DNA of 64,000 nucleotides from Phallusia mammillata (GCA_965637545.1 OZ281494.1:27218001-27282000); one strand, 5' to 3'. Positions 27,763 through 64,000 are shown, counted from the first letter of the stretch. Program-made: numbers and translations. Notes: generated from the sequence alone by a model not told the origin.

Positions 27763-28941
27763 TTAATTTAAATCTTGGGAGGAAAAGTCATTTTTCCACC
27801 TCAGCCAGTTTTTACTTTTGCGTTTTCGACCGCGTTTAGATTTTGGACGCGTAAAACAAACAGGTTTAGGGGCAGTTTTGTTTGATGGAGGTTCGATGCC
27901 TAGAAATTGACAAGTACATGCAAATGGGACCTGGACTGTTTCAATACAGCGACGGCGTTTGCCATACTCTTTTACCACCGTCATGGGCAAATACATTGGC
28001 ACACTTCTCATATTCTTTTTTTCCCTTCCGGTGTCATAGTCGATGCAGCCGTCGCAAAGGCACTGGGCTTTTGATATGTACCTTGGTTTTCTAAAATGAA
28101 ATGTTGAAAGTGACCATTTCTTAACTTTTTAGGTTTTAATTTTGTTTGAAACCAGCACTAAAAGGAAAAAAATCGTATCTTCTACCTCTTTTGGGCAGAA
28201 ACAAATCATACTTTACACAAAAGTAGATTGTAAAAATATTAACCATTACCTTCTCGCATCAAATTCGCGTACAAATTTCCAGGGTGACAAACTTCGTTGT
28301 CTAACAGCTTTGGCTTTTCGTTTATATCGTTTATTGAAACGTGGGCAGCTTTTACTTTGGACCGATCTCTTTTCGCGACCAACAGAGTCCACGTCATCGC
28401 TAGTGACGTTCACCACTTCTACTGTTTCCATGAGTTTCGGATCTTGGAGTAGAAGTTCTTCAAAATGATAGTATTCATTTAACGGTCCAGCCAAAACCCT
28501 GTAATTAATAGATAGCTGTTTGTATAACAAGTTGGAGGTTGTATTTGACAATTCACGCGTGTATATTCTGTGTTCCCAGCAAAGTGAAGTTTTTTTGGTA
28601 TAAAGTAACACAAACGAGGATATAGCAAGTGCTTGTTAGCAGCTTTCAATATTATATAGTCATAAACCGTAAGAACACTGTTCATTATCATCTCAAATAG
28701 TATGACAGTGGTTCGGAATAAAATAAACCTTCTCACAAAAGTGTAAAGTACACATGCAAGGAATTAAAATCATATTTATGCCGATTTGCAGACACGACGG
28801 TTTGGTAGCTTGAGTTAGATGGTATGATAAAGGATAATTTACATTTCTTTACACTTACATTTCGTTGTTGAACATTTCAACTTCGCTTCCTGTCGCCAAT
28901 CCCGCAATAAAAATCATCAACGTCGGCAAGATCAATGTCAT
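27763..28941 (-). CDS. IL17: IL-17 class b, copy 3 (~219 aa; native promoter)
   Basis: Exons 28941-28859, 28498-28250 and 28090-27763. A 1-nt indel changes only the last residues (FSSQDLN vs FPPKI). Confidence 0.9.
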
Positions 28942-29898: not shown

Positions 29899-30236
29899 TA
29901 GTGTTTTTTTTAACCTTTTTAGCGCTCGTACCCTTCGAGCTTTCATAAAATGTTCCCGTGTCTAAAATAGCCGACGGAAGTTAATAAACTCGTAATAATA
30001 GCAAGTAACATAATTTTAATGATAGCTATTTATAACTTGCGTGTTGGATGCATGCATTAAAGCAGTATTGTAAGTAGTACAAAACCAACCCGTTTTAGAC
30101 ATATAACAAAGTAACTTGTTACGCATTGTTTACAAATATGCCCAAATACGGTATGATTTCACCCTGCATGTCGTACCCCCTGCTTTAGTGCTTCGTACCC
30201 CCAAGGGGCACACGTGCCCCTGGTTAAGAACCCCTG
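29899..30236. mobile_element. hAT-like MITE
   Basis: Right terminus GGTTAAGAACCCCTG, degenerate left terminus; flanks accttcag/acctacag (7/8 TSD match). Confidence 0.6.
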
Positions 30237-31179: not shown

Positions 31180-31526
31180 CAGTGGTTCCCAACCAGGGCC
31201 CATGGCCCCCCCAGGGGGGCACGAGCTGTGTTCCGGGGGGCCACGGGCGTACATTCACAAGAAACACCCACCAAAAGTCATTTTCACTTTAACTGTATTC
31301 CCGAATTTAATGGACTATTTCACATACTATTTGTTTATAGTGCGGTTTATCACACTCATTTACTCTTTTAGACCTGTTTAAGGCCAAAATTAATACCGCA
31401 TTCCAACGCGAGATTGCTATGTACATTTTAAGGGGGCCACAGGTCCTACATGGTAACTTGAAGGGGCCACGAGGCCAAAAAGTTACGTTAAGGGGGCCAT
31501 GGTCCACGAAAGGTTGGGAACCACTG
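31180..31526. mobile_element. hAT/Charlie-like MITE just 3' of the IPO4 stop
   Basis: 15-bp TIRs CAGTGGTTCCCAACC / GGTTGGGAACCACTG; TSD atttactt/atttacat; empty paralogous site ATTTACAT at 60319-60326. Confidence 0.9.
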
Positions 31527-34500
31527 ATTTACATTGTGGCTAAATGTAGTATATGCAAGCGGAATGGAGCCCTTTAAAGCTACATGCATGACGAAAAAAA
31601 GTCATTCAGGAGCATGTTATTATGAAGAGACAATACGCTCAATAATCCCGCGCGTGTTCTGGTCCAACGCCTCGCAGATACGGTTCATCGCCTTCATATC
31701 ACGTGATCCCATTTCGCGCAACTCTCTACCGACTGACGTGCGAACATCTAAACACAAAACAAGTTTCTAATCAACAAAATGTTAAAATATGATAAGTAAA
31801 TTTCTCTTGACCTTACTTAACATACACTTATTTGGCAAAAACCATTGTGTTATTACTCTACACAATTTGTTTCAGGTACTTTTGCATTACACATGACAAA
31901 ACACCGGCAACCGTTATACAACGGTATTTAGCTACCGACACATGGCGCTCTACAAACCACCCGTAGAGATAATATTTATGACAGGTTTCAAAATTTGGTC
32001 TTAAATGCCTCGCACCACCCAAAGAGAAGTGTTTAACTAACATACCAGAACTAGAGTTACCATCTATCCTCACTTTATTGAAACAAACAGCGACCAAAAA
32101 CCCACATCCACAAGACACATTAAACAAAGTTTTGATCGTGGGTTCGAATTGCACTTCTGACATAATTTATTATGAGAAACAGCGACACAACACTTACCGT
32201 TTTCGATCTCTACGTTCGCGCACACCTGCGCAAAAATGTCCACGATGCGCGTAACGTTGGCTACGTCACTGCCGATTTGTGGATGACGTAGAAGTCGTGC
32301 CAGGCAGCCATAGACTGTAGCATCTTCGGCATGATCTTCCACAATGGGCAGTTTTGATAATAACACCGGCAAAACCTAATAGATACGAAACAAGGTTTTA
32401 GTTAATACACATCACACTTATAGAAATCTTCGCTTTACTGGGCTAAGCCTTTTTTAGAAAGGGTTTGCGCAAACAACTATTACAGTTGGTCACAATTGAC
32501 ACAAGAATGATTTATTTTTTACGTTGTAAAATATTTATAAGTTTGTAGTGTCATAACACAAAACGTACAAATTACAATTTTTTTTTTAGTTGATATCGTT
32601 TTCACACAAAAAACAGGATTATTTTTAGTTTGTCTCAGTAGCTTTGTAATACATGCTCGACCGAAAGATCGACCATTTCTGATAGCTAAAGACTACTGCG
32701 TAAAGTTCTTATACATGGAACGGCGTGCAAATAACCTTTAACACGACGGTGCTTTTTTACCTGGTCAAGAGGCACGACTTCCTGATTGGCGACAATCATG
32801 CGACAAACCGCACCCAGAATGTTGTCAGTGACCCTTCGATTCTTCTCACGTGTCAGTGCAGCCGACATACAACCGAGCACTGACGGGTAATGTTCCACCG
32901 CTGCGCTGCCTCCGTTTTTCAATACCAAGCCCAGACCGTAAATGGTGTTGTTCCGAACTTCGGCTTCTGAATCCCTGCAAGGATTCATTCAATTTGCTTA
33001 TGAAAGTTGTAAGGCTGCCAGAACCAAACGTTCCGCATAATCATTTACTTAACAGATCAAAAATAAAAACAGATAATTCAAGGAGTAGGACACCTTCGAC
33101 ACTTAGTTGTAGTTTTTGTGAATTACAAATAGTTAATATCTTGACCTATATACCAAAACAACACACAATTAATGAGACTACTTAAAATAACAGTTGTTTA
33201 AACTCTAGTAATCCAATCTTGAAGAGTTTTGAGTAAAAAGTATTTGCAGTGTCTTTAAAAAACAAAATCAAACACGATTTGACAAGCTGATGGAGAAACA
33301 TTGATATTGATTATACCTTGTGAGAGGAATTAGTCTTGGAACAATGTGCGAAAGTATTTGAACACTTGATCCATCTCCTAACTTGTCCACGACCTCAGCT
33401 ATTGTCCCAGCACCGAACGAACGCTCAGCTACAGTATTGGTGACTTTCTACAGAAAATGTTTAAACTTTATGATAAATGCTGACACAAATGTTTCGCAAA
33501 CATTAGTTGAACGAATGTGTTTTATTGCTACAACAGCATATCACCCATAAGATAACTTTAATGCACTTACCAGTTTGTTGAGGAAAGTGGGAAGACATGA
33601 GATGAAGTATGGAAGAAAGGCTGCGCCCAGTTTATCTGCCAGAGTAGGAAAAATCTCACCACAATATTCGACCAACATCTCGTCGTATTCCGCCTACAAT
33701 AATATATAATTTCAGACACGAAATTTGAATGCAAAACATTTGTGCGAATTCTAAGTTTGTTTTCGGACATATACGCATTTATGATGCTCATTTATGTACA
33801 AATGAAGCATTGAACTCAACATTGATCATTACTAAAAGCAGGTTAACAATAAATCTTTTCAATTACGTCAAAGTAATGAACATAAACTTATAGTCCGACT
33901 GTAATATTTATTTACAACAAAATATACTATACCTCGTTAAAAACAGTAACAGTACACAAAAACATGCCTTGATTCTTTAAGCTTAGGATGTCATGTAAAC
34001 GAACAATTAATCACTTTAAATGTACAAAGAACAACTTTTCTCACAACTAACTTTTGTCTTTTTACAGATTTAAGACCTCGGTGGTAAAACTCGCCTGGTA
34101 AATAGTTTTGTGGTCTTGCACTGCTGCTTTATCTAGCCTACTTACCAAAAATCCATGAACCAGATCATAAAATATAAACTGCACTGACCTGACACTCGAT
34201 CTGCAAGCAACCATAAAGTTGTCAACTCAACACTACATTTCCCGGTACCGTAATATCTTGAAATAGATAATGCTGGATTGCATCACTGCTAATATGGTCA
34301 TTGGTGTTATTAAACTGAAAAATACACGTGACAAACAGAGAAGAGCAGAACAAAACCATTTACAATAGTATTAAGTTTTGAATCTTGTCCAACACGTTCT
34401 AATTAGTGTTCATCCACAAGGCAGTGGCCTGAACTATAGCGAGTTTTAATTCATTTCTCCATAATGTATGAACACAAAATTTTTATAAGGGGGGGAGTCA

Positions 34501-35942
34501 TGTACACAATCACTAGGAGGTAGCACAGAGATCAGCTAATTTGAAGTATGTCAATACCCATTATGTTAATCACCTGTTGTTCGTCCTCTTCATCTGTCTC
34601 GTCGTCTTGGCATGCCGCTTTTTGCTGGAGAACTTGCACCAAGGAGTTCATCAACATCTGCCGGGTAAATACAAATTACAATAGCTGGATGAAAAATTGC
34701 GGTAAAAGTCATCGTACACAAGTTAGTAACAGTTTGTGATAGGAATTCGTCGACAACCTTTTGTATGTAACGGATCAAAACTAAGATCAGCCAAGTCGGT
34801 GTGAACCGGAAATTATTTTATTTTAAATTCTCTTTCCATTACTGTTAACCATGTTTTTTATCCTCTCAATTTTGACGTATTTTCATCACATTTTCTCATT
34901 GTTAGGCTACTAATGGGCAAAAATTTGATCAATTATAAAAACTTCCTTGGACGATTTTAACGATTATCATGCAACAAAAACTATTGTCCACTAGCGAACA
35001 GATAAAACATAATAAATGTAAGGTGTTCCATCAACAACAAAAAATTGGACGCTCAAGTTTGATAGCTTTGAGGGAAACAAAATGTCGTCAAGTCTTTTAG
35101 GTTTTGCTAGGGTCGCTAGTCGCTACAACGTTTTCTTATTAGGCCAAATTATTAGGGAGCATCTCTGGTTGACTTAAAAATTAAACAAAACTATCTAATA
35201 CCAGCAGCATTTGCGATCGTGAAAGCAGTCAAACAAATTTTACCGCAAAGAAACGTAGCAAATATTTAGTGACAACATCAGTATCAGTTTTAAATGAAAT
35301 TTTGTTTTCCTCGATGAGTCGACACATTACGTTGTAAAAAATTTCGCAACAAATCGACCTATCGGACAAAATCCCATTACTAGTTTGTCGTTTCGGTTAT
35401 TACCCAAACGGATTACACGTAATTATACTGATGACCATTCAATTAAAAGAGAAACAAATATTCCGGAAAACAACATCCCATCGCGAAAGCAATTGGCACA
35501 AAAACAAACGATTGGTGTTTCTCAGCACATCCACGGAAATGTTTAGCGAGAAAGTGACGGGTGATAAAAACAATGGTAAGGGGGCGAAATGCCCCCTTTC
35601 AATCACGTGATGCAGATGACACAATTCGTACACTGTTGCTGGAGGCAACAAACAAATCAAAGATTTAACTCCCTTGTATCTAGTGAGAGTAAGCAAAAAG
35701 TGCTATCGCTATAGCTAAATACGTCATTTTATGCTAGTTTAAATGTAAACACAATAGAAACTTTTGTTTTTGTAGTTTCTTGTTTCCAAAACGTGCGCTG
35801 CAATGGTGGAATCACGGATTATGAGTAATAGTGAAAATTATTTCATTTGGTTTCGGAAGCGTTCTGTTATACATAAAAGACAGAAGGGATTGCAGAAAGT
35901 CAAAACTCAATCTTAAGATAAAAAGAATTAAAAATACAAAGA

Positions 35943-37332
35943 ATGTGGACAAGAGGTTTGATTTTAGGTATATTTGTGACCTGTGTCTGTTTGTTTCAAC
36001 TGATGCCCTACTGCACAGCAAAAAGGTGAGTGTAACAGAATGTCAAGATAATACTGCATTGATACTGTTTCCATTTTTTAACACTTATGAAGTGGAAATA
36101 CAGAAAAAAAATTTCCACTGGCAATAAATTTGTATAGCAAGATGTTTTGTAGACCTCATAGTTTTGTATTTTTTCTGCATACTTGCAATTTATTTTGCAA
36201 TATGTTGCAGTGAAGTGGATTGACGAAGATGTACAAAAATCCATACTGATACAGTCTATTAAGTTATTTAAATGTTTAATCCTGTTCACATTTATTTAAC
36301 TGATAGTTTTTATTAACAAGGCTGCGTTTTCAAGATTGACGCTTGGGCTTGTGTGACGTAACAATTCATAGTGTTGATTTTAGAATTAATACGTTTGTGC
36401 GGCAGAAAGAGAGAGAAAGAGTGGCAAAAACCAACACTAAAACTTATATTTCCACAGTGGAGCGTTAGTGGAGTACTGGGAGATGGCAAGGGTGTTGGGA
36501 ACACAACCAATGGGGGACAAGCAATTGCCAACGATCAATGTGACTGGACTAAGTGCGGATGAGATAGTGGAACACAAACGCCAGGCGGCCACCACGATTG
36601 GGTGCCCCACTTTTACAGAAGAGTACAAGGAGAACGCGCGTCAACAAAGACAGCGCAGTATATCCCCGTGGAAGTATGTTCAAAACTATGACAGCCGAAG
36701 GTGGGTTGAATTGATCAATACTGTTTTGGCGCAAATTTGTGCAAAATTACACAAACGAACCATGCTAACTTTTTAAAGTTGGACGAACACTACAAAATAT
36801 TGTTGATCACATTTTTTATAAGCATGTGCAATACTTTTTATTACCTCCCAAAACATATTTACTCGAAACCAAGATTTTTCAGGTACTTTTTAGACATCAG
36901 CAAGCTCTCGGTCACATTGGCAACTCTTAACTTTTGGACCATAACTATTGGATCGAAAAGGGTTTCGGGATTGCATAAAAGCATTTTATTCGTAAAAACA
37001 TTTAATTCGGTCCTATTAAACCTTTCGCTCACCCTGGCAAAAATGGCACTCACCCAGTTAAAGGACAGGCATAGACAAGATTGAACGCCTAAAAACTAAA
37101 CAATAAGTTTTGTTTCAGACCGCCCGGACAACGTTTATTCCTGGATAGCGTTTGTCTGTGCGATGGCTGCATTGACCCGATTTCTGGCTTGGAGGTTAGA
37201 ACCGGTTTAAAAAGCGTCGGATTAAAACTACCCAGAAACGTTAGTGTGCTCAATGCTACTGGCCAATACGAAATGTCGGAAATCAACGTACAATTTGGCT
37301 GCCACTGTGTTGTGCAAAACACGGAATCTTAA
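35943..37332 (+). CDS. IL17: IL-17 class c (~179 aa), nested antisense in IPO4 intron
   Basis: Exons 35943-36025 (MWTRGLILGIFVTCVCLFQLMPYCTAK), 36458-36700 (...EHKRQ...RSISPWKYVQNYDSRR) and 37119-37332 (...VCLCDGC...QFGCHCVV...). Confidence 0.9.
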
Positions 37333-38397
37333 ATCTACCAAGCAGTAGAATGTTTTTTATACAACATGTGGATTACAATATTGTTGTTATTATTGTTTTT
37401 GCCTTTTCCAAATTATACGCACCAACAAATATTTTTACTATGTTTCAACCGAATTTTATACATCTGCTTTAGTGTCTTAAGCGTTAAGACTGTTGCCAAC
37501 AAACTAAAATGTAGGTTAAGCAATTTTAGCTGGAATTTTTCAATTAACTGATGGGTTGCGACAGCCTAGTCTGAAGTATCATAAAAGATTATTCAAAATT
37601 CAGAGAACAGAACACTTGACTCGATAACCCAATGTTTTTAGGTGTCATTGCTGTTTACTTAACCGTTCAACAAAGGAACTGTGATGATGCTTATGAAATT
37701 TTAACTTTGATTAAAAAAGAAATAGTAAAGCTTATAAAACCATTATTCCCTACCGAAACACCTCGAAACCATACAAATTAACAGCGACATCCAACGGCCA
37801 AAAGTGTTTTTAACTTCTTTAACAATTTAAGCTAAGTTTCGAAAATGCATCATGACGAAAACTAAATCCATAGATTCTGTTGCGAAATTAGCCTATTGGT
37901 AAATGCGGACAACGAAACTTTGTAGCAACTGAAAAAACGTGGTGTTTTTAGCAAGCTTGTTGGAACTGAAGATTTTAAAACAATCAAATATTTTCCATCA
38001 TAGCCAAATAGTTTCGTGGAAGCAGGCATGTCAAAGAAACTGTCCTCCAAAAAGTTTTCCTGAAATTTGTCAATACAGTTTAATCGTCAAAAGCAACCAG
38101 TTAAAAGAATACTTTGTTTTCGGGACTAAAACAAACAGTTTCTTGCATGAAAATGGTATTACCCAAATCAAATTTCAATGGGAAAAATCTGACTTTATGA
38201 CGTCGCACTGACACCGGCGCAACCATGTGAACAATGGTCAATACAAAATAGCTTAAACAGCACCCGGCCTTTGCGAAAAACGTGCGTAATTCTATTTCTT
38301 CCTTCTTCCTACTTCCTACTTCAAGCGATATAAACTGGCACCAACAATAACGTTCGCAAATAAAGTTTCACCACAGACAGCTCCAAGTATTCAAAAC

Positions 38398-39482
38398 ATG
38401 AAGTTGATCTTGAAGACGATTATGATTTTTATAGTGGGGTTGACGAATGGAATTGAAGTTCATCCATTCAGTAAAGAAACGTGAGAATATTTGCACGTAT
38501 ATTATAATACTGTATTGTTATGAACATATTGCCGATCTGAAGTATATTCAGAAACTTTAGGCATAATCACAAAATGACCGATTGTAATTATTTGCCATTT
38601 TTATGCAAGGCGACCAATTTTGTCAACATAATCCCTTAAGGGCATTTTTTTCTCTCGCTAACACTTTTGTCCTAATGGGCGCAAACGTTGTAATTATAGA
38701 GCTTTGGCTGATGGACTGTTGGAAGAATATTATCAGTTTGAAGAACTTCTACTCAAGGATCCAAAACTCATGGACACATTGGAAGTGGTCAACGTCACTA
38801 GCGATGACGTGGAGACTTCAAGTCGTGGAAAGAGATCAGTCAAAATTCAAAGCTGCCCAGTTTTTACTGAAAGTTACAAAGAAAATGCAAGGTTCCTGAA
38901 AGAACGCAGTCTATCACCGTGGAATTTTGTGCTCGATTATGATGCAAGAAGGTGAGTAATAGGAAAATAAAATCTAATTGTTTAGTCACAAAGTCAAACA
39001 TATTTAATTAAATAAAGAGCATTATTGTTAACGTACGGCACAAAGCATCATCATAAAAATGACAGTGGGGAAATTTGAACTTGACGATCGATTTTAGTGG
39101 GAAACTTCACCAAAAAAGGTTAAGAACCACTGTAATAGGTAATATTTTACAACCTTCTTCTGTACATAACATATTCGTTCCACGGTGGTGTTTTGACAAA
39201 AAACTGAAACGTCTAATCGACTGACCATTTATCAACATTTTTAGACGAAAAAAGTACATAGCAAAAGCCCAGTGCCTTTGCGACGGCTGCATCGACATTG
39301 AAACTGGAATGGAAAACAAAAATATGAGAAGTGTGCCAATGTTTTTGCCCGTTACGATGGAAAACATGTATGGTAGATGCAGTCATTGTATTGAAACGAT
39401 TCAAGTTCCTTTTGCATGCACTTGTCAATTTCCAGTCACCGAACCTCAATTAACGAAAACTGCTCCTAAAGCTGTTGTTTGA
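38398..39482 (+). CDS. IL17: IL-17 class d (~190 aa; RGKR furin site; close paralog of class b), nested in IPO4 intron
   Basis: Exons 38398-38480, 38700-38951 and 39245-39482 (KAQCLCDGC...VPFACTC). TATAAA at 38329-38334. Confidence 0.9.
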
Positions 39483-42400
39483 TCCCAAACATCAAAACTG
39501 ATTCTTGGCCTAAACCTTGCATAAGTTGACACATTTTACATCGCAACGTGTTTATTTCTCTGTATTTGCTCTCAAATAAAAGAGTTGTTTATTTTCGAGT
39601 TTCGACTGCTCTCTGTTGACCGTTGACTTCACTTTTACTTCCGTTGATTGCTTAAAAATCTGTTGCTAATGTAAAAGTCGTAAAAGACAACAGTGAATCG
39701 TTTGTGCAAATATGCAACATTCAGACACAGGCAAAGTTTTTCAAGAAATCACGACAGCAGAACAGACGATTAGATAAAAACCGATTGCAAAAACAATACA
39801 AAACCAATAAAGGTGACGATCTCTAAGGCAAGTATTACATTGTAGGGTCAAAAATGACGCTGATGCAAAATATGGTAACTAACAGACAAACAAATATTTA
39901 AGTAAAACATGACGATCTTGTATACTTTTAGAATTACGAATGTTTTTAAAAACGCAGTGACCATGGAGATCGTACATCTATAATAATTTATCTGGTTTCC
40001 AACCTTTATCGACAAAATGCTGACTTATCACGTCAATTATTCCTCCCCAATACACTACATAGTAGATTCAAAACCATACAAACATCATTTAAAATTGGGT
40101 TCTTTATCAACTTCACAGGTCATATTTCCAGAGCTAAAGTGTCTATTTTCAAACCACATGTACAAAATATAGGAAATTTTTCCATCCGGTTTTGAAATAC
40201 CTTCGTTGGGAGGTATTACTGCGCTTGACTGGGAACCACTGATCTATCTCATTATGCGTTCTGGCGCAAAGAGCATCAATTCAATTCTACTTTTTAAGTC
40301 GCAAAAATCCGGGAATGCAGAAACCATAAAAGTACGTTCAAGTTGAGGGCAAGTAAATTTAATACAAAAAGTTTGCGTAACACATCAATAACGAAATGAG
40401 AAATTCGAACGCCGGTCGAAAGTTGTAAGTGATGGCGGAAAGCAAAAACCACGATGGAAACCTCCTTTTATTTAATCACACGGAAGAGTGACTGGTGATA
40501 CGCATATACCTGTTTTTAAATACTTTTTGATGCAAGCAGTAAGGTTGTGATTTTGTATTTGCCAGTTCATATGTCCCATTTCAGGTTAAGTATGCACACA
40601 CAATCAAAAGTTTAGCCAACTGACTGCAAGTCATAAAATGTTGAAAAATGAAAAAAAATCTACATGTCGCAGCATGACCACAAGCAAATTGTTTTTTCTA
40701 AACAAAATCCAAACCCGATTCAACTGATATCAGATATCTATGTTTTCTGCTTTATATTACATTTTTGGAATAAAAAAGAAATTTCTAATAGACCTAAAGG
40801 GGCAACTGGGATTATAAAATCACTTATGCCCTAAACTTTCCAACAAAAATATGCACTAATAAACTTTCCAAATATTACGTAATAGTACTCTTCTTTACTC
40901 TTAAAGAAACATCATAAACGATCATCAAAACATGCCAGATCAAATTTAACTATATTTTCTATTTTTATTTGGCACATAAATAGACTGTACTTTTTCGCCC
41001 TTGCTTTTAGTGCGTCGTGTCAATACAATGGTCACGAAAATGCGTCGTTACGCAAATGACGTTGCACGCTCCTTGTATTGAATGCTGACTCAGCGGTATT
41101 TTAGGCACAGCGAATATGACATGACAATAAAAATAACGGTATCGGTCTCGGTCGGAAAGGAAACGTGTTTTCCGTTTTGGCATTGGCATTTTAAAAATAA
41201 ATACTTATTATATTGGTTCTATTTAAAACTAGGGACTTGAAAATAAACTTTCAACCAAAGAATACCACAAAATCTAATCTCACAAACGGGTAAACTTGAG
41301 TATACACTTCACTTTTGCAGCGCGTAAGTTTTCACCGAGCTTGCGTATTGCAAAACAAAGTCTAAACAAAGGACAACTATTAAAGACACATTTCAAGTAA
41401 TTTTAAGCGATTAAATTACAGAACAAAATTTCTTTAAATTTTTTGTATCCTACGCCTCTAACAGATTATTGATTTCAAAATGTCCTTTTAATCTCTGGTC
41501 ATGGTTAAGGACTTTTTTATTCTGTAAAAAAACTGTTACGACCTCGCGATATGGTTGTCAACCGCGATCAAACAGAAAAAAAACATTCCAACTATTAAAA
41601 TTCACAGCGACACCCCACGGCAAAAAGGATTTTTTACATCCGTCCTACATTCTAGAGACAAAGCGTTGAAAATCCGTTACGACGATAAACAAGTCTGTAA
41701 ATTCTGTTGCAAAATGAGCTAATTGTTAAATGCGGACCACGCAACGAAATCTCAAAGTGATACTTGTAGCAACTTAAAAAAACGTATCACTTTCAGCAAG
41801 CTTATTAAATATAAAGATTTTAAACAACCAAATATTGTCCATCATAGACAAACAGTTTCTCAAAAGCAACAAATGAACGGTGGTTCTAAAACAAGATGTC
41901 AAATAAGGGATAAAAGTTGCACCGAAAATTTCCCTAAAATCCAACTTTTGAAAGCAACCACTTAAAACAATACTTTCACCGAGCGAAATAAACTCAACTC
42001 AACTCAACTTTATTTTCGGGACTAAAGCAAATAGTTTCTTGTGTAGAAAAGGAATTACCCTAATTAAATTTCATTCAGAAAAACCTGATTGTATGACGTC
42101 GCACTGAAACCGGCGCAACCATGTGAACAACGCTCAATACAAAATAGCTTAAACAGCATCCGGCCTTCGCGGAATAACTACGCAATTTAAAACTAAGGGT
42201 GTGCAAAATCAATGAAAACGTCCACCACTAGTGTAGAGGTTCAATGACTAGTGTAACGGTTTTTTGGTTACGTAACCAACATAAAGAAGATTGGTGATTT
42301 GACTCATTTGCTATGATTGAGTGGCCTGCGCATGGCCTTGCTGGCAGATACCTAAAATACATTCATGTACGGCTAAAAATGAGTGGTTTCCGCTGCAGGA

Positions 42401-42531
42401 AAGAAGTTTAGTTTCTGATGGGCAGGATAAAAAGGGAAGAATTATGCTAAAAAGTATTGTAACAGTTTACAGTAGTTGGCAACGTACAGAAACGTTTAAA
42501 GAAGACATTAAAAAATTACCAAAGAAGAGAA

Positions 42532-43859
42532 ATGTTTAAGCTGATTATTGTTCTGGTGATTTTGGTCGCAGTTAAACCAGATTTTATGCAGGTGGACGCC
42601 TGTAGTTTTGAAAGGTACGTTAAAATATTGCTAAATCCAAATGGTGTAACGTTTTTTGTCGACAATCTGCTTTCCAAACATAATACTAATTATTAAATAA
42701 AAATAATTGTTGTGGTTATTTTGTAGAACAGGTTTTGCAGGTTGTCATTCTAACTACTCTAACTATAAGAAAAAAAAGTTTAGTAACTATTTTTTAATTC
42801 TGGTACATTATAACAAACGTCATATTTTATAACGGGGGTGCATTAAAATTGTTTGAGCTGTTTAAATAAAGAATTCTTTTTTAACATGGTTAACCGTACT
42901 TTGGCGTATATGGAAACAAACGGCATATAAGCTCATATCTTTCCACAACCTTTAGCATCAATACGGAAGAATACTGGACCCGAGAAAAGGCGATGCGAGA
43001 AAATAAAGCGATACTAAACAACATGGAGACTTTTCAGAATCAAACAGGGAATATGGATCATGTTTCACCGGACAAGAAAAAGTGTTTGAAGCATGTGGAG
43101 ATGTTGGAAAAGAAAACATACGACGGTCTTTGTAACCGCGTAATGTCACCGTGGAAATACGTGAAAAACTATGACAGCCGAAGGTTCGTTTGACTGGCAA
43201 AATTACTAGATCGAAGATAGTTCTTGATGAAATCATATGGCTAATAAAAGGTTAATACCAAAATATAAAGCAATACACAAAACCAAACTTATTGTTCACG
43301 GTATATTGTAATACAACCAGTTTCCATGTAAACTGCAGCGTGTTAAAAATAAAATCCTTATTTTAACTTTCTAACAACAATTTCCTTGATTTCTTTCGGC
43401 ACATCATTCCTGTAGACTGGATACCAAAAAAGAAAACATGTCAAATTCATCCAAAAACGCGCAAATGTTATAGCACACCATCAATCGTTCTAAAATAAAT
43501 AAAAATGTTTGCCGCTAACCAAATCATACATGTAAAATAACGGAGCAGTATTGCAACAATTTAATATTGAATCATTAAACCATCAACATTGCTTCAGGTC
43601 CGATGACGATCGTGACATTGTAGACGTGGAATGTTTATGCCGGGGCTGCATGGCAAAAATCGGCAGTGGTGAAAATCCGAAATATATTTACACCGAGCAG
43701 TTGGAAAGTAGGCCGTTGAAAATGCAACGAACAGTGACTATGATGAACGGTGAAAAACGAACAGTGTTAGTGAGGGTTGGATGCCATTGTGTGTTTCCTA
43801 CAGGCTACCGGCCGTCTAGATACGGATTATCAAACGACAAGTTGCTTTTGACTTCTTAA
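42532..43859 (+). CDS. IL17: IL-17 class e (~190 aa; related to class a), nested in IPO4 intron
   Basis: Exons 42532-42614 (MFKLIIVLVILVAV...), 42956-43183 (...NRVMSPWKYVKNYDSRR) and 43598-43859 (ECLCRGC...VRVGCHCVFPT...). Confidence 0.9.
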
Positions 43860-46800
43860 TTTCTACTCGAAGAGCGTCAAATTTGGATTTGGAACGTGTG
43901 TTGTTGAAACGAACTGCTTTTTCCGTTTTTGGTGATTTTAAAGTGCTACAAAGTTAATTAATTATATTTTTGTTTCGCCGAATTGTGATATTACAGCTAT
44001 TTATGTATGGACAATTATTTGTGTGTATATGTAAGGACAAGAAAAAGATATAGATTTCACACAACATTTCAATACAGTGGCAATATTTTCTGACAAGTAT
44101 ATGTCACCCGGGATCAGCAATTCAACCGGGTTGCCATATACCAGTGGTTCCCAAACTATGGGCCATGGCCCAGTACTAGGCCACCAAGACATTTTCAATG
44201 GGCCACAGATTCATTTGAACAGATTCTACTGTTTTGTTCTACTGTAGATATTATGCGCTTTGTTTTGAAAAACATAGAATTTGCAAAGAATTCCGAATCT
44301 TGTAGCCAAATTTCAGGAGCATGTATCTCATTAAAAATAAATTGCTAGAAACCATTTCGCCTGTTTTTGAGTTATTTTTTGTGCCCAATGATTTCATACA
44401 CCGTACTACAAGTCGAATAGTTTTGATTAATAAACAAGTTTTGTATTCGTTAGTAACCAAACGTAACACAGCCGGGGCACAAAACACAGACTGGAAATAC
44501 TACGCTAATTTTACTACAAGAATTCAAATTGCAATTTATCTTTGAGTCTTGCCTTTCAATTCGAAACTACGTGTGTTTGTCATGTATTGCCTTTTGTGGT
44601 TAGTTTGGACGCAAGGAAAGCTAATGGTGAATTGGCATTTTAAAACAAAAAATAACATGCACCGCCTGCAGACAATTACAACATTTATCAACGTCATTGT
44701 CAAATCTTTACTTACGCCAAACAAAGCGTTTTTTCCAAAAAAGGAGCAATAAAAAAATGTTTGCCACGTTACCGAGAAGAAAATGGAATTATTTACTACC
44801 GGTCACAGAGACTAGCTATGATGGCAACTATGACACACGCTCAAGCCAGCTCACTTACACGTACATGTATTTTGGCAACCAGGCGTCATTGTGACAGACA
44901 ATAAACAAGGGTCCTGCACTATACAGCTTGTCATAAAACCTGAACAACCGTATTTTGTCCTTTCTAGGAGGCAACAGAATGGAACAACTGTTGCGGAAAG
45001 TAAAAAGGCTATTTGTTTATCGTTCTAAAAAGCAACGTGCAGTGTATAGCACAATTTGGCTGATATTTTCAGTTTTCATTGCTAAAGGACGTCGAAACAT
45101 GGGTACAAGGAATACATTTTCCGCCCAACATTTTAACAACAACTGGATTATTATCACATTATAATACCAAACATGTGTAGTGTTGAAACACCACATCTAT
45201 GAGCTACGCGAGTTAAAGGAACATAAAGAATCAAAACAAAATACCAATCAAATAGTCTTCATTGTAATAAATACAAAAAAACATATCTATAATAGTTTCA
45301 CTAAAGGTAAAATCCATAAATATTATCTTGAAGACAAAAATTAAAACAAGAGTTCATATAGCAAACTTATGTGTTACAAAATAACCTTTACAAGTGATTC
45401 AACCAAGTATTCTTAAATTGCTTCTAACCTGAAGATCCTGTTCTTGATTCGCGAACGTTTTGACACCAGCGGCGCTGACGAGCTCCTGTGTGGTGGCGAT
45501 GGTTGTCATGACGACAAGCCGCTCCGGGTCGTCGGTGATTGTCGTGCAGAGGAGTGGAAACAGTTGCAAGAGAAAACTGGCATCTGAAAAAAATGTCACA
45601 ACCAGATTAGTTGCTAAATTATACGTCGATTTTTCATAGACATCTGTCCTAATTCTCCACGTACCCATTTCCGTGATATATATTCTACAAGCTTAAATCT
45701 AAAACCGAATTTATAAAAATCTTTAGTGCAAGTAAAAAAAAAAAACTTAAAGTGGTGTACTTTTGTGTTTGATTTTTTTAAACCAGAAAATTTCCAGAAA
45801 AACAAAATTGATGACAATTCAGAATACAAAACAACAACCTACAGTTCATATTCTGTTCCTGATAAGCAGTGACAGTAAACTGGCCACAGGAAGCGATCGC
45901 AGATTTACGCACATCATGAATGTGGGAATTCGATCTGCTTGAAAACCTGTTTGAACCGGTTTTAACTGGTTAGCGCGGTAATGAAAACATTACATAACGA
46001 AACAGTTAATTGAAAGAATACCTCGTTGAAACAATCGCATAGATACACTGCAAACGACTTTGGACAATACTTAGCGAGATCGCCCAACGTTTCACAGGCG
46101 TCCGCCTTTTTGTCCATGTACGAGTTTTCAACAGAGAACGCTTCGACGAGGTCTGCATCTAAGGTACAACACACAAACAAAATCTTAGATTAGCTTCCGA
46201 TCGCATTAATCGCTGCAGCTAGGCAAGACTTCTTTTCTTGTTAACAATCTAAAATCGGAAAGGCACGACAAGAAAATGAAAGTCAAAATTGCCTTTTTTG
46301 AAAGTCTCTACGTAGGACTCTTATCTGTTCCACAGGTGTTATGCGAACCCACCCACAGTAGGGAGTTTAAACGACGTCTATACTGCAAGTCCATTGCTCA
46401 TACTGGCGCTAAACGGCGAGCGTTAATGGTTGAAATAGAAGCCACTGGACTCGAAATACAAAACTAAGTTAGGATCATTGTCTCAAAATTTACTGCTGAT
46501 AAAAATAATTCGCTGCCTACATATCTTACCATCATCGTCTTCATCCTGTCCGTTTTCGAGGTCAGTTTCCGTGGAATCGTCCAGAAACGAAAAATCAGCT
46601 TGCCCTGGAGTGTCACTGTCCTCAGAGAAATGGGCCTAATAAATAAAAATAGGTTCTCTTACACTTAAGAGTCTGAAGAGTTTTAGCCGTTTGGGATCTA
46701 GAACTTGGGCAAATTTGCTGCAATTGAAGAAATTGACAATACACTTAATAAATCGTTTCCTAAGCTTATTAACTTCCTGGTGTACTTCTTTGTTTTAAAG

Positions 46801-47105
46801 TATACATTACTGCAACATTGTGCTATTGGTTATCCGAGGGTCTTCTTGCACTATTAGGAAATATATTTAGAGTATTATCATACTACCGGGGACTTTCGCA
46901 TACTTACAATAACACCGTCCGTCGATTGAGCAGATGAAACGAGATTTTTGACAATCACTTCAAGAAATGGGGCCATGTTTTCACCTACGATACTGGCCAA
47001 GGCAGAAAACAAACCGAATCTGGACAAAAGAAAACACGAACAAGTTTACAATTTTTTTAACCATGATCTAGTTCGGGCTATAGTCAAGCTGTTTATGCGT
47101 TAGAA

Positions 47106-47384
47106 CAGTGGTTCTCAACCAAGTTTGTGTTGCAAATAACTTTATTCCTAATTTAATCGACTTTTTCACACACTATTTGCCTATATTGAGGTTTTTCACG
47201 ATTACGGATTCTTGTTTACTCTATTCGACCTATTTAAAGCCGAAATTAGTACCAAATTCCAACACGAGTTTGCCATTTCCTTTTTTAAGGGGGCCACAGG
47301 TCCTACAGGGTTAGTTGAGGGGGGCCACAAGGCCAAAAAGTTATTTTTAGGGGGCCACGGTCCACAAAAGGTTGAGAACCACTG
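47106..47384. mobile_element. hAT/Charlie-like MITE in IPO4 intron
   Basis: TIRs CAGTGGTTCTCAACC / GGTTGAGAACCACTG; TSD cgttagaa/cgttagag. The right end resembles that of 31180-31526. Confidence 0.85.
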
Positions 47385-47898
47385 CGTTAGAGGGTAATGA
47401 AGCGGATATTTTATTAAATTTTAAAGTCATTTAATAAAAAAAAGTTTATTATAAAGTTTTATTGTTTCAGTCTAGAAAAAAACAAACATAATATTGATAG
47501 CAATATGCAACCGTTTTTTACAACTAATATTGATTAAACTAAAAATTAGCTCAAAAAATTGCACTGACGCTGCTCTCCTTAGGTCCGGATCAGAGTTGTC
47601 GGTTGTGACAAGATTCATACTTAGTTTCAGGCAATGTTCAGCTAGTTGCATGTTTGATTTTCCTACTGTGCGCATCAGCACTCCTAAAGTGTCTAAAACA
47701 CGAAAGTGGGATTTTTTTTAAACAACATCTTTTTATCGTTATAAATCTGTTTCGGAGACATCGTACAAAAAGTTGAATGTCATTTAACATAAGATAATTT
47801 TTTTTAAGCTTTCACACCTTTTTTTCTGACAGGTTTGTTAATTTTCAAGCTGGAACTACAAGCAAAAAGTCCTCAATTCAAGAAACAATCATTTAAAC

Positions 47899-48134
47899 CA
47901 GCGGTCGGCAACCTTTTTTGCACTGCGGACCGTTTTTGAAACTAAAATTTTATCGCGGACCGGTCTTCAAAAAACTACAAATGTTTAGCAATAAAAACGC
48001 CTAAATTAGTTTATCATGCCCGGGATACACGGGCAAAACGTTTTATAGCATTTAACCTAAAAAAATTCAACGGCCCGGTAACGAATTCCTCGCGGACCGG
48101 TACCGGGCCGCGGACCGGCGGTTGCCGACCACTG
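47899..48134. mobile_element. hAT-like MITE (first of tandem pair)
   Basis: TIRs CAGCGGTCGGCAACC / GGTTGCCGACCACTG; exact TSD ATTTAAAC at 47891 and 48135. Confidence 0.9.
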
Positions 48135-48142
48135 ATTTAAAC

Positions 48143-48587
48143 CAGTGGTCTTCAACCTTTTTTAACCGAGACCCCAATTTATGAGAAAATTAAATTAGCA
48201 TTAACATGCGACCCCATTTTTTTAATTTATCCAATCTAATTCGCGTTAAAGCTCACCAGTTTGTAGAAATCAGTTAATTTATGTATTTTTCCCAGTACCC
48301 GCTGCATTATTTTGGACACAATATGGCACTCGTGGGGCTCTATCGCGTAACAATGGGTTGGACTATGTTTACATAGAGTTTTACATAGATTATTGCACCA
48401 CAATGATTAGATTGTGACACGAGGTACCAAGCTGTACTGCAAAACATAAGCAAAGGTTGCGAACTAGAACAAAAACGCATGCTTTTTTATGCTAAATTTA
48501 AAAGCCAATAAATTTAATTTATAGCGACCCCGAACAAAGTTTTGGCGACCCCACTTGGGGTCGCGACCCACAGGTTGAAGACCACTG
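48143..48587. mobile_element. hAT-like MITE (second of tandem pair)
   Basis: TIRs CAGTGGTCTTCAACC / GGTTGAAGACCACTG; exact TSD ATTTAAAC at 48135 and 48588. Confidence 0.9.
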
Positions 48588-50887
48588 ATTTAAACTATGG
48601 GTTGAAACTTTATGTCGACATCCAGGAGACTTTGGCTTGCAGCATATTTTTCTTAGAAAATGGAACGATTTTGTGTAAAAATAGATTTATAAAAACTCTA
48701 AAAAACAACCTATAACACAAAACAATAATCCGAAAGTTTTCTTCAGCACAATTAGACACACTGTTACTCATACAAAACACACGCGCAACACAAAACTGTT
48801 AAACAACCTTCAATGATTATTTCACTCACTGAGATCCAGTGAGTAACTTACCTAGTGCTTGCGTGTGAATGGTGGAAAGGCATTCCTGCAGAAGTTGAAG
48901 AATCTCTCCAAGATACGGCTGTATGTTCTCCTTTGCTGCATTTGCTTTAAGTAAAGACCGCGTAATTTACGAGAGCAAAATTTAAACATTTTCTAGCATT
49001 TTAGTTCTACACATATTTTCCTTTTTTTACTTCGTGCTTCTAATACGCCATTGTTTTTTATTTATGGCTTAAACGCTTACTGTCCTTTCATAGATATCTC
49101 TCGTAACAAAATTTCAGTCTGTTTTACTCTTTGTAAATAGGAAACTACGAACGAATTAGGCTAAATGCATAACCCAAGCTTTTTATGCAATGACCAGGGT
49201 TATGTGATAATCCAGATGTTTTTTTTGGTAATAAACGGCTACGATTAGGATTTGCAATCTCTATGCCATTAAACGGATTCATATGTGTTTATATGAAATT
49301 CAACATTAAAATCCAATATAAATTTAGTTGATTGGGGAACTTCGAGTTTTTTTTTCTAGGCATATTTATTGTTCGTCCCCGCGCAAATTGAAAAACATAA
49401 CAAAGCATTGAAGCCAAAATACGTATTTTCCATGTTTACCGAATACTAACCTACTGCCCCGATGGCGCTTACAGCCAACTCCTTGGAGTGAATATCATTT
49501 GACGATCGAAGTGATGCAAGAAGATTCTGCGTGAGTTGGTCCAGGTACGGAAGAATGCCTGATTCTGTTACAGTTACAGGGAACAAAATGAAACTACTTG
49601 ACTGACTTTTTAACGGTTATGTTGCTATAAGTTATAAATAAGTTTATTGCTTATGTATGTTTACCTATTACCAAATGCTAGATAAACTTATTTTTCGGGA
49701 AAAAATGCGCAGGACCTTGAATGCACGGACAGACCAGAAAAAAATAGGGGTAATATTACTATTTCGTGACAACAAATTATTTTACCTTACTGCGATATGC
49801 TTTATGTTTAGATTAGATTATCGTCTTTCAAAGTTACTGCAATACAGAATACTATGAAAACTCAATTAATCCTTTCAGGGACGCCTCAAAGCATGCACCC
49901 CCAACAACTATTTGCAAATAAGGCGTTACATGTCGTTATACGCATGTCGTTATAGATCGTTTAAGGACTATGAAAAGGTCAAAAAATTCCAGAGCTGTTG
50001 AGGTTTTGAATCTTTTTATTTTTTTGCTTTGTACCTAGGTCTTCAACAAAATTTTCCAAAGCATAGTAAGCCCTTGTGATTCCTGAATCTTTGCCTCCAC
50101 CACTGAGTTGTTCAAGGAGTGAGAAAAGAATTGGCATGACTTGTGGTGCATACTTGCTTATGTCCGGCTAAAATTAAAGACAGAAACACGTTGAGAAAAT
50201 TTTTCTGCAGGATCAGCTTTGAAAACGGTATCGCAAAAAAGCTTCATGGTAACATTTTATCAAATAAGTTTCACTTACTGCAACATTCACAGCTTATATA
50301 AATGGTGAAACACTGTTTTGTCACATTATTTTATTGTGGTAGTTACCTGTAAATGCTCTGAAAACTGTCCCATGGCAAACATTGCAGCGTTTCTCACTTT
50401 TGGATGAGGATCTGTTGCACCTCGACAGACTGTCTCCACAAATGAATTTAAATGACTAGAAAATACACAAATAAATATTTTGAAGTTCTTATAAATTCTG
50501 AATCCCAACACAAATAACCACATAAATCGTTAAAAATACTGAGTCTTATCAATAGAAAGGAATTTTGAGAAAGATTTTACCAGCTTTGGCAAATGCAAAC
50601 AAGTATAATGTAACATGTTTTACTTGTTTTTGATAAATTCAGAAGTGCCCTCAGCAAGACAAGCAAGTGTGAGTAATAATCCTCTCTTATGTTCATCATT
50701 GCCTTGTGACAAGCAAGTTGCAACAAAAGGAAGCTGTGATAGAATGCATTGCTTAGTATTGAGGTAAATTTTATTCAGCATTACTTCATGGTTTTGCATA
50801 AGTTAGATTGCATAGGAACATCCACAACACTGCCTAAAAAGCCGAATTGCTAAGGTTAGATTGTCGACTTGGTATTATAGACTAGTG

Positions 50888-63400: not shown

Positions 63401-63488
63401 TCACCTGTTGTTCGTCCTCTTCATCTGTCTCGTCGTCTTGGCATGCCGCTTTTTGCTGGAGAACTTGCACCAAGGAGTTCATCAACAT
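60416..63488 (-). CDS. IPO4: Importin-4, six 3' exons of second copy (gene continues beyond the right edge)
   Basis: Exons 63488-63405, 62500-62378, 62254-62124, 61781-61568, 61182-61005 and 60543-60416; frames open, splice sites intact. Confidence 0.85.
63307..63328. repeat. Poly-G tract (G22)
   Basis: The paralogous site 34489-34495 has only G7. Confidence 0.9.
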
Positions 63489-64000
63489 CTGTCGGATAAA
63501 TACAAATCACAATAGCTGGATGAAAAATTGCGGTAAAAGTCATCGTACACAAGTTAGTAACAGTTTGTGATAAGAATTCGTCGACAACCTTTTGTATGTA
63601 ACGAATCAAAACTAAGATCAGCCAAGTCGGTGTGAACCGGAAATTATTTTATTTTAAATTCTCTTTCCATTACTGTTAACCATGTTTTTTATCCTCTCAA
63701 TTTTGACGTATTTTCATCACATTTTCTCATTGTTAGGCTACTAATGGGCAACATTGCAAAAAATGGGCAAAAATTTGATCAATTATAAAAACTTCCTTGG
63801 ACGATTTTAACGATTATCATGCAACAAAAACTATTGTCCACTAGCGAACAGATAAAACATAGTAAATGTTAGGTGTTCCATCAACAACAAAAAATTGGAC
63901 GCTCAAGTTTGATAGCTTTCAGGGAAACAAAATGTCGTCAAGTCTTTTAGGTTTTGCTAGGGTCGCTAGTCGCTACAACGTTCTCTTATTAGGCCAAATT

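What the first reader, a model, noticed from the sequence alone, without database searches (positions are those of the whole stretch)
34658..45428. Three IL-17 genes nested antisense in one 10.8-kb intron of importin-4
All other IPO4 introns here are under ~1.2 kb, while this one holds IL17c, d and e on the opposite strand, and IL17a/b lie just past the IPO4 3' end. Inducible cytokines inside a housekeeping nuclear-import gene raise transcriptional interference or open-chromatin hitch-hiking. It also explains why amplifying IL-17s drags along a truncated IPO4. Prediction: paralogs of c/d/e start just beyond the window (IL17c' near 64.8 kb).
Basis: partly seen in the sequence, partly recalled or inferred. 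Interest (0 to 1): 0.7.

Follow-up and report, generated by a model that had tools for sequence, protein, structure and literature searches.

The report
IL-17 genes nested inside importin-4
Three complete IL-17 cytokine genes really do sit backwards inside one intron of a sea squirt's importin-4 gene, and Ciona has one IL-17 gene in the same intron, so this is an old example of the well-known "gene within a gene" layout.

Summary
The stretch 34658-45428 is a canonical GT..AG, phase-0 gap between two importin-4 (IPO4) exons on the minus strand, and those exons are consecutive in the protein. It holds three intact three-exon IL-17 genes on the plus strand.

The IPO4 copy in the window is a relic. 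It lacks exons 1-9, including the importin-beta N-terminal domain, and a 1-nt insertion at 45916 creates a stop codon.

The intact gene runs from window coordinates 84709 to 60416, mostly beyond the window. Its homologous intron is 12.3 kb and holds near-identical IL17c', d' and e'.

A public Phallusia mammillata importin-4 protein is encoded exactly by that intact copy (1090 of 1093 residues). It reads straight across the junction.

In Ciona intestinalis the same IPO4 intron (4.9 kb) holds one antisense IL-17 gene. The nesting is therefore probably ancestral to both ascidians, and Phallusia expanded it from one gene to three. A ~31-kb tandem duplication then copied the module.

Transcriptional interference and chromatin hitch-hiking remain untested. 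This is a new member of a known kind, nested paralog clusters. The scan had not found it before on other DNA.

The parts
34658..45428 (-). The 10,771-nt IPO4 intron 20 in copy 1, the truncated copy. It is GT..AG, phase 0, and holds the three IL-17 genes.
45429..45583 (-). IPO4 exon 20 in copy 1. It matches profile positions 747-793 and residues 758-808 of the public protein, and ends ...QEQDLQ.
34574..34657 (-). IPO4 exon 21 in copy 1. It reads MLMNSLVQ...EEDEQQ, matches profile positions 794-822 and residues 809-836.
31620..50733 (-). IPO4 copy 1, a 5'-truncated relic. It keeps exons 10-26 only (residues 361-1093), with intact splice sites. It has one 48-nt in-frame indel and one frameshift.
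45916..45916 (-). 1-nt insertion in exon 19 of copy 1, between KQIEFPHS and DVRK. It creates an in-frame TGA. It is absent from copy 2 and from the public protein.
35943..37332 (+). IL17c. Exons are 35943-36025, 36458-36700 and 37119-37332, encoding 179 aa. A TATA-like ATAAAAG lies 70 nt upstream of the ATG.
38398..39482 (+). IL17d. Exons are 38398-38480, 38700-38951 and 39245-39482, encoding 190 aa. TATAAA lies 69 nt upstream of the ATG. The CDS is 100% identical to IL17d'.
42532..43859 (+). IL17e. Exons are 42532-42614, 42956-43183 and 43598-43859, encoding 190 aa. It is the most divergent of the three.
44137..44388 (.). Dispersed ~250-bp repeat (SINE-like by my reading) inside the intron. 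The genome search gave more than 2000 first-look candidates.
50800..50815 (.). Junction where similarity to the intact IPO4 copy stops. This is inside the intron upstream of exon 10. Sequence from the start of the IL17a/b repeat unit begins here.
60416..63488 (-). 3' end of the intact IPO4 (copy 2), exons 21-26. The gene continues to its ATG at window coordinate 84709, beyond the window.
63489..64000 (-). Start of the 12,317-nt nest intron of the intact IPO4 (63489-75805). It holds IL17c' (64793-66193), d' (67238-68322) and e' (71368-72701).
27859..28941 (-). IL17b3, the nearest IL-17 gene past the 3' end of IPO4 copy 1. It is a paralog of IL17d, 63-68% identical in amino acids.

Best explanation
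This is a host/nested gene arrangement that ascidians have probably kept for a long time. It is most likely structural rather than regulatory.

Shown:
- The genome is Phallusia mammillata or something very close to it.
- Its importin-4 gene has 26 coding exons. Intron 20 lies between the codons for residues 808 and 809.
- Intron 20 holds three IL-17 cytokine genes on the opposite strand. Each has its own first exon with a signal-peptide-like leader. Two have a TATA-like box about 70 nt upstream of the ATG. All three have the same three-exon layout.
- Ciona intestinalis has one antisense IL-17 gene in the same intron.
- The module in the window has a host copy that lost exons 1-9 and carries a frameshift. 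The downstream module keeps the working IPO4.

Inferred:
- An IL-17 gene entered this intron in or before the common ancestor of Ciona and Phallusia.
- In the Phallusia lineage local DNA-level duplication raised the number from one to three and swelled the intron to 11-12 kb.
- More IL-17 copies (a and b) accumulated just past the IPO4 3' end.
- Unequal crossing-over then duplicated a ~31-kb module: the a/b genes, the 3' two thirds of IPO4 and the c/d/e genes.
- The two modules exchange sequence by gene conversion.
- The nested IL-17 genes are transcribed from their own promoters, independently of IPO4.
- The nesting persists because it is hard to undo without damaging the host gene, not because it regulates anything.
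For: - Anatomy: canonical splice sites and phase; consecutive profile positions 793|794; complete IL-17 gene models; Pfam IL17 hits.
- IPO4 identity: one exon hits PDB 7unk importin-4 at E 2e-15. Named importin-4 relatives were found. IBN_N scores 30.5 bits in copy 2 exon 2 only.
- Intact versus relic copy: the profile covers positions 24-1041 in copy 2 but only 338-1041 in copy 1. The frameshift is shown. Only two IPO4 places exist in the genome.
- Public protein: P0165 (UniRef A0A6F9DF91, Phallusia mammillata, 1093 aa) is encoded exactly by copy 2 at 1090 of 1093 residues in 26 exon blocks, including the junction DLQ|MLMN. It carries every residue that distinguishes copy 2 from copy 1.
- Nest in the intact copy: c', d' and e' are intact, with 5, 0 and 2 nucleotide differences from c, d and e.
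- Conservation: in Ciona locus L011 the exon for profile 747-793 ends at 22431 and the exon for 794-821 starts at 27365. A called 199-aa gene lies on the opposite strand at 23267-25777. Its exon 3 scores 35.7 bits for IL17.
- Outgroups: L008 has the same intron position but only ~400 bp and no IL-17. The Holothuria gene has no intron there. The IPO4 tree puts L008 outside the Ciona + Phallusia clade, with support 90/96.
- Duplication and conversion. The nest intron differs at 1.1% of aligned positions, is 100% identical over 38.0-39.5 kb, and the flanking IPO4 introns differ at 3-14%.
- Known behaviour of nested clusters: PMC3240667 and PMC11694760.
Against: - No transcript data for IL17c, d or e, or for either IPO4 copy, could be reached, so independent transcription is inferred from promoter-like features only.
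- IL17e has no TATA-like motif under the patterns I scanned.
- Sequence similarity cannot show that the Ciona nested IL-17 is orthologous to c, d or e. Its best matches in this genome are other IL-17 loci. Common origin rests on position and orientation alone.
- The tool does not say whether P0165 comes from cDNA or from a gene model.
- The exons of the relic copy are much more conserved than its introns, and pN/pS between the copies is 0.11. That does not fit a long-dead pseudogene, so the order of events may be more complex.
Confidence: 0.8

Rival explanations
1. Host and nested genes are functionally coupled. Constitutive antisense IPO4 transcription through the nest holds IL17c', d' and e' down in resting cells, or open host chromatin poises them. 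That coupling would be why the arrangement is conserved.
For: - Same intron and same antisense orientation in Ciona and Phallusia.
- The nest intron is the most homogenised part of the duplicated module, at 1.1% mismatch.
- Interference between host and nested genes is documented in other systems (PMC3192792, PMC11694760).
Against: - No expression data.
- PMC3240667, citing Assis 2008 and Kumar 2009, reports that nested structures are gained more often than lost and that expression of host and nested genes usually shows inverse or no significant correlation. Conservation therefore does not require function.
- IL17c, d and e stay intact in the module whose host copy is broken.
Confidence: 0.15
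2. IPO4 copy 1 is not dead. It might be a functional 5'-truncated paralog, or a transcribed antisense unit kept for the sake of the IL-17 genes inside it.
For: - Its exons differ from copy 2 at 1.1-3.0% of positions, while the adjacent introns differ at 3.9-14.3% (Fisher p from 0.02 down to 4e-10).
- pN/pS between the copies is 0.11.
- All checked splice sites are intact, and the only large indel is in frame.
Against: - It lacks exons 1-9, and no substitute first exon was seen.
- The 1-nt insertion at 45916 gives an immediate stop, and no alternative acceptor rescues the frame.
- Four of the five polarisable amino-acid changes are on the copy 1 side.
- The identity mosaic suggests that gene conversion from copy 2 could keep the exons similar.
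Confidence: 0.15
3. The second module is an assembly artefact: two divergent haplotypes laid end to end. On this view there is only one IPO4 with one IL-17 trio.
For: - Marine invertebrates are highly heterozygous (general knowledge).
- The copies are 94-100% identical over most of their length.
- Low pN/pS would fit allelic variation.
Against: - There are no N runs anywhere in the 134 kb examined.
- Copy 1 ends at a clean junction with repeat-unit sequence instead of continuing into exons 1-9.
- Some intron segments are only 65-80% identical, and the two copies differ by several stretches with no counterpart in the other.
- IL17b4 lost its first exon at a second specific junction at 59381.
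- No further IPO4 copies sit on unplaced contigs.
Confidence: 0.08
4. IL-17 genes entered IPO4 intron 20 independently in the Ciona and Phallusia lineages.
For: - The Ciona nested IL-17 is no closer in sequence to c, d or e than to other Phallusia IL-17 loci.
- L008 has an empty 400-bp intron.
Against: - The gene, the intron (1 of 25), the strand and the polarity all match. In both species the IL-17 5' end faces exon 21.
- IL-17 sequences diverge too fast for orthology to be read from about 60-80 residues.
Confidence: 0.07

Closest known systems
[quoted passage not shown]
   Same: Several paralogs of one family sit together in a single intron of an unrelated, widely conserved host gene. The nest is kept across distant species and is absent from an outgroup. 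In the TipE case the nested genes are expressed on their own programme.
   Different: The family differs (secreted cytokines) and so does the host (a nuclear import receptor). Here the copy number changed from 1 to 3 between species. The nest was also re-duplicated together with a fragment of the host gene, leaving a second nest inside a broken host copy.
Ciona intestinalis IPO4 locus with one antisense IL-17 gene in the same intron (L011, GCA_018327825.2)
   Same: The host gene, the intron position (profile 793|794), the opposite strand and the polarity all match. In both species it is the largest intron of the gene.
   Different: Ciona has one IL-17 gene in a 4.9-kb intron. There are no flanking IL-17 genes within 10 kb and no duplicated module in the 43-kb locus fetched. 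Sequence orthology to c, d or e could not be shown.
Mammalian host/nested gene pairs (PMC11694760) and interference by nested genes (PMC3192792)
   Same: A gene lies wholly inside a long intron of another gene. The catalogue reports no strong orientation bias and says crosstalk is possible.
   Different: Those are mostly single nested genes. No expression data exist here.
Tandem IL-17 arrays of marine invertebrates: sea urchin with 35 genes (PMC5457136), molluscs (PMC8353272)
   Same: Lineage-specific IL-17 expansion by local tandem duplication. This locus has 11 IL-17 loci in the window and 14 in all.
   Different: Those papers do not mention importin or nesting (0 occurrences). These genes have the chordate-type SPW motif and the two-intron structure common in vertebrates.

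Membership tests
IL-17 cytokine family (Pfam PF06083) | Match to the IL17 domain model above its curated cut-off of 24 bits | tested here: met
   On exon 3 alone, c scores 34.6 bits and d scores 44.0 bits. e scores 23.1 bits (E 1e-4), just under the cut-off. Exon 3 covers only model positions ~19-81, because the rest lies in exon 2.
IL-17 cytokine family (Pfam PF06083) | Cystine-knot cysteines (C-x-C ... C-x-C) and the SPW motif | tested here: met
   Read from the translations. c has CLCDGC...GCHC and SISPW. d has CLCDGC...ACTC and SLSPW. e has CLCRGC...GCHC and VMSPW. SPW is the chordate form according to PMC8353272.
IL-17 cytokine family (Pfam PF06083) | Secreted protein with an N-terminal signal peptide | tested here: inconclusive
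   Each 83-nt first exon encodes a hydrophobic leader: MWTRGLILGIFVTCVCLF, MKLILKTIMIFIVGLTNG and MFKLIIVLVILVAV. No signal-peptide predictor was available.
IL-17 cytokine family (Pfam PF06083) | Binds an IL-17 receptor, and is induced by immune challenge | not testable with these tools
   No expression or binding data.
Importin-4 (IPO4, importin-beta superfamily) | Collinear similarity to IPO4 over the full length, including the importin-beta N-terminal domain | tested here: met
   This holds for copy 2 (60.4-84.7 kb). Profile positions 24-1041 appear in order. IBN_N PF03810 scores 30.5 bits against a cut-off of 21. PDB 7unk importin-4 is hit at E 2e-15. Residues 1090 of 1093 of the named Phallusia importin-4-like protein are encoded exactly.
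Importin-4 (IPO4, importin-beta superfamily) | The same criteria applied to the copy inside the finding (copy 1, 31.6-50.7 kb) | tested here: not met
   Only residues 361-1093 are present. There is no IBN_N domain. A frameshift with a stop lies at 45916. It is an IPO4-derived relic, not a complete IPO4 gene.
Host/nested (intronic) gene pair | Nested genes lie wholly between two consecutive exons of the host | tested here: met
   Exons 20 and 21 are consecutive in the profile and in the public protein. IL17c, d and e span 35943-43859 inside 34658-45428. c', d' and e' span 64793-72701 inside 63489-75805.
Host/nested (intronic) gene pair | The host transcript is actually spliced across the nest | tested here: inconclusive
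   The public protein P0165 reads ...QEQDLQMLMNSL... and matches copy 2 exactly. The tool does not say whether it derives from cDNA or from a gene model.
Retrocopy / processed gene insertion | Intronless copy with a poly(A) tail | tested here: not met
   All three nested genes keep two introns in the same phases as their paralogs outside the intron. They arose by DNA-level duplication.

The most novel reading that the evidence does not exclude
The IPO4/IL-17 nest is a conserved regulatory unit in ascidians. Antisense transcription of the housekeeping host across the nest would set the resting level or the inducibility of the nested cytokines. Phallusia would then carry a built-in natural experiment: near-identical IL-17 trios, one inside a live host gene and one inside a broken one. 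The unusually conserved exons of the broken copy could mean that it is kept as an antisense transcription unit.
Probability: 0.1. Interest if true: 0.65.

Novelty: new member of a known kind. Interest (0 to 1): 0.35.

Why it matters
- **Annotation.** The result fixes the annotation of a complicated immune locus. It says which IPO4 copy is the gene, which is a relic, and gives exact models for six IL-17 genes.
- **Evolution.** One IL-17 position has probably been stable since the Ciona-Phallusia ancestor, even though IL-17 sequences diverge too fast for orthology to be called from sequence. Position inside IPO4 intron 20 may serve as an anchor for IL-17 orthology among ascidians.
- **A possible experiment.** The two near-identical trios, one in a live host and one in a broken host, offer a clean test of whether host transcription affects nested genes. 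Both Ciona and Phallusia are experimentally tractable (general knowledge).
- **Limits.** Nesting of paralog clusters in introns, and tandem IL-17 expansion, are both already well documented.

Tried and rejected
- **Word-index protein search with the ORF holding IL17b4 exon 3.** No hits, so it gave no public IL-17 protein of this species.
- **Pfam on single IPO4 exons.** Almost blank, because HEAT repeats are too weak exon by exon. I replaced it with a profile of 30 full-length IPO4 proteins.
- **Rfam over the whole window at gathering thresholds.** No hits. This includes the hammerhead ribozyme proposed at 22963-23011 in another note.
- **Canonical NF-kB motif GGGRNNYYCC.** None in the 64 kb.
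- **Pfam on ten other ORFs inside the intron.** Nothing, so I found no further protein genes or transposase there.
- **Alignment.** It used wrong locus coordinates and was redone.
- **Orthology of the Ciona nested IL-17 to c, d or e by sequence.** Inconclusive.
- **The look-up of encoding contigs for the public Phallusia protein.** Not on record.
- **An early inference I abandoned.** After L008 showed a 400-bp empty intron I took the nest to be Phallusia-specific. The Ciona locus overturned that.
- The spliced (joined) IL-17 and IPO4 models were never sent to search, fold or look-up tools; exons were searched one by one by reference. Exons were joined only inside local scripts, to check reading frames and to build one tree row.
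- **Third large protein search.** Not spent on looking for IL-17 expression evidence.
- **Human sequence.** No contig that I take for human was met.


Full report
**Where this is.** The window is C1:27218001-27282000 of a 240-Mb assembly with eight large pieces. GC content is about 36%. No N runs occur in the window or in 70 kb of flanks that I fetched.

**The host gene is importin-4.** Minus-strand open frames between 31.6 and 50.8 kb look like importin-4. One exon (32689-32988) hits human importin-4 structure 7unk at residues 908-990, E 2e-15. A whole-library HMMER search with that exon returned importin-4 proteins named as such from Pogona, Holothuria, Mizuhopecten, Octopus and others. I built a profile from 30 full-length hits and scanned all minus-strand open frames of a 134-kb extended region.

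**There are two copies.**
- Copy 1 (50763 down to 32199) covers profile positions 338-1041 only.
- Copy 2 (84454 down to 61006, mostly past the window) covers positions 24-1041 in order.
- Two exon queries against the whole genome each found exactly these two places.

The exon matching positions 747-793 ends at 45429 and is followed by GT. The exon matching 794-822 starts at 34657 and is preceded by a pyrimidine tract and AG. The intron is phase 0 and 10,771 nt long. Every other intron of copy 1 is at most about 1.16 kb.

Inside this intron, on the plus strand, are three complete genes:
- IL17c: 35943-36025, 36458-36700, 37119-37332; 179 aa.
- IL17d: 38398-38480, 38700-38951, 39245-39482; 190 aa.
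- IL17e: 42532-42614, 42956-43183, 43598-43859; 190 aa.

Each has an 83-nt first exon encoding a hydrophobic leader, two phase-2 GT-AG introns, an SPW motif and the C-x-C...C-x-C knot cysteines. c and d have a TATA-like box 69-70 nt upstream of the ATG. Pfam IL17 on exon 3 alone scores 34.6, 44.0 and 23.1 bits against a cut-off of 24. Ten other ORFs in the intron match no Pfam family. A 250-bp dispersed repeat lies at 44137-44388.

**Which copy is the real gene.** Copy 1 is a relic, by three lines of evidence.
- It starts at exon 10.
- The importin-beta N-terminal domain (PF03810, 30.5 bits) is found only in copy 2.
- Exon 19 of copy 1 carries a 1-nt insertion at 45916 that turns ...FPHS DVRK... 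into an immediate TGA.

A profile search seeded with exon-by-exon references returned UniRef A0A6F9DF91, "Importin-4-like, Phallusia mammillata", 1093 aa. Copy 2 encodes 1090 of its 1093 residues exactly, in 26 exon blocks from the ATG at 84709 to the stop codon at 60418-60416. Two of the three exceptions are split codons and one is a K/Q difference. The protein carries every residue that distinguishes copy 2 from copy 1, and it includes the 16 residues that copy 1 lacks.

Three things follow:
- The genome is P. mammillata or something very close to it, in agreement with earlier scan notes that call it a sea squirt.
- The annotated product comes from copy 2.
- Its sequence runs ...FANQEQDLQ|MLMNSLVQ... 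across the homologous intron. This is intron 20, at 63489-75805, 12,317 nt long. The next largest intron is 1,808 nt.

I could not learn from the tools whether that record is cDNA or a gene model.

**The nest in the intact gene, and the prediction.** IL17c' (ATG at 64793), d' (67238) and e' (71368) lie in copy 2's intron. All have intact frames and splice sites. They differ from c, d and e by 5, 0 and 2 coding nucleotides.

**The duplication.** Self-comparison shows a ~31-kb tandem module, about 20.2-50.8 kb against 50.8-82.2 kb. Each module holds one IL17a gene (plus strand, e-like), one IL17b gene (minus strand, d-like), the 3' part of IPO4 and the c/d/e trio. One boundary lies in the IPO4 intron upstream of exon 10, which explains the truncated copy.

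Identity between the modules is a mosaic:
- 100% over 38.0-39.5 kb, which contains IL17d;
- 98-99.8% up to 44.4 kb;
- about 94-95% on either side;
- only 65-80% in introns at 47.7-50.0 kb.

Over the whole nest intron the mismatch rate is 1.1%, against 3-14% in the other IPO4 introns. I read this as gene conversion on top of an older duplication. That is an inference.

**An unexplained point.** The exons of the relic are much more similar to copy 2 than its introns are. Examples are 3.0% versus 14.3% mismatches (p 4e-10) and 1.4% versus 6.4% (p 5e-7). pN/pS between the copies is 0.11. Splice sites are intact. Yet the copy has no 5' end and does have a frameshift. Possible explanations are recent death of a once-functional paralog, exon-biased conversion, or some residual function. 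I cannot tell them apart. Four of the five polarisable amino-acid changes fall on copy 1.

**Relatives.**
- *Ciona intestinalis* (L011, GCA_018327825.2). IPO4 shares the exon layout. The exon for profile 747-793 ends at 22431 and the next starts at 27365. This 4.9-kb intron, the largest in that gene, holds a called 199-aa gene on the opposite strand at 23267-25777. Its exon 3 scores 35.7 bits for IL17. Its 5' end faces exon 21, as in Phallusia.
- *L008*, an unnamed ENA contig. Its IPO4 is 53-56% identical to both ascidians. It has the same intron position but only ~400 bp, and no IL-17 within the 20-kb locus.
- *Holothuria*. There is no intron at this position.
- *Tree.* An IPO4 tree places L008 outside a clade containing Phallusia and Ciona, with support 90/96.

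The simplest reading is a single insertion in or before the Ciona-Phallusia ancestor. The alternative is an earlier insertion that was lost in L008. Sequence cannot confirm orthology, because the Ciona gene's best matches in this genome are other IL-17 loci at 35-37% identity.

**What is known.** Clusters of paralogs nested in one intron of a conserved host are documented. Examples are TipE/Teh in CG18675, and GMC oxidoreductases in Flo-2 (PMC3240667). In the TipE case, expression of the nested genes is poorly correlated with the host. More than a tenth of mammalian genes host a nested gene (PMC11694760). Nested genes can interfere with host transcripts (PMC3192792). IL-17 tandem expansion is documented in sea urchins and molluscs (PMC5457136, PMC8353272, PMC4517768). 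None of those three IL-17 papers mentions importin. A search for Phallusia with IL-17 found nothing relevant. The IPO4/IL-17 nest itself therefore seems undescribed in the open literature I could search, but it is visible in Ciona's public annotation.

**Verdict.** Two additions matter. The host copy in the window is a broken duplicate. The nest is probably ancient, because Ciona shares it. The regulatory ideas remain hypotheses.

Noticed in passing
window 45429-50733 versus window coordinates 75806-82168 (loci L002, L010): Exons of the truncated IPO4 copy are far more similar to the intact copy than the introns between them (for example 3.0% versus 14.3% mismatches). pN/pS is 0.11, despite the missing 5' end and the frameshift. 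This is unexplained. It could be recent death, exon-biased gene conversion or residual function.
   Followed up: partly
window 38000-39500 versus window coordinates 66850-68350: A 1.5-kb tract containing IL17d is 100% identical between the two modules, while flanking sequence is 94-99% identical. It looks like a recent gene-conversion tract.
   Followed up: partly
window 58638-59468, junction at 59381: IL17b4 has exons 2 and 3 but no MTLILPT signal-peptide exon. Similarity to the b-gene unit stops at 59380, and sequence like 30207-31177 follows. This copy probably lost its first exon and promoter.
   Followed up: partly
window 38111-38291 and 42007-42187: IL17d and IL17e share a 180-bp segment (86% identity) upstream of their ATG codons, by 107-287 nt and 345-525 nt respectively. 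It could be a shared regulatory element or a remnant of the duplication.
   Followed up: no
window 48869-48946 versus window coordinates 78947-79087: IPO4 exon 14 differs by a 48-nt in-frame indel. The intact copy and the public protein carry an acidic block of about 16 residues (MGGSKEEEGDEGQLNVL) where the truncated copy has a single I.
   Followed up: yes
window 44137-44388; similar pieces at 31133-31528, 40088-40243, 47205-47420, 48017-48136 and 48467-48589: A ~250-bp dispersed repeat (SINE-like by my reading) with more than 2000 first-look candidates genome-wide at 92-97% identity. Similar-looking frames elsewhere in the window were judged by eye only. Copy 2 has an extra ~1.5 kb next to this element (73.18-74.74 kb), which accounts for the longer intron.
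   Followed up: partly
window 22963-23011: Another note proposes a minimal hammerhead ribozyme here. Rfam at gathering thresholds found no RNA family anywhere in the window.
   Followed up: partly
L011 27780-43167 (Ciona intestinalis): A TANGO6-like gene on the opposite strand is annotated as overlapping the last exons of Ciona IPO4, and a zona-pellucida-domain gene (35569-37986) lies inside it. Nesting and overlap seem common at this compact locus.
   Followed up: no
window 31662-31658 and 60458-60454: The public Phallusia protein has K where both genomic copies encode Q (...CEALD[K/Q]NTRG...). This is the only real residue difference, so the record comes from another individual or assembly.
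   Followed up: yes
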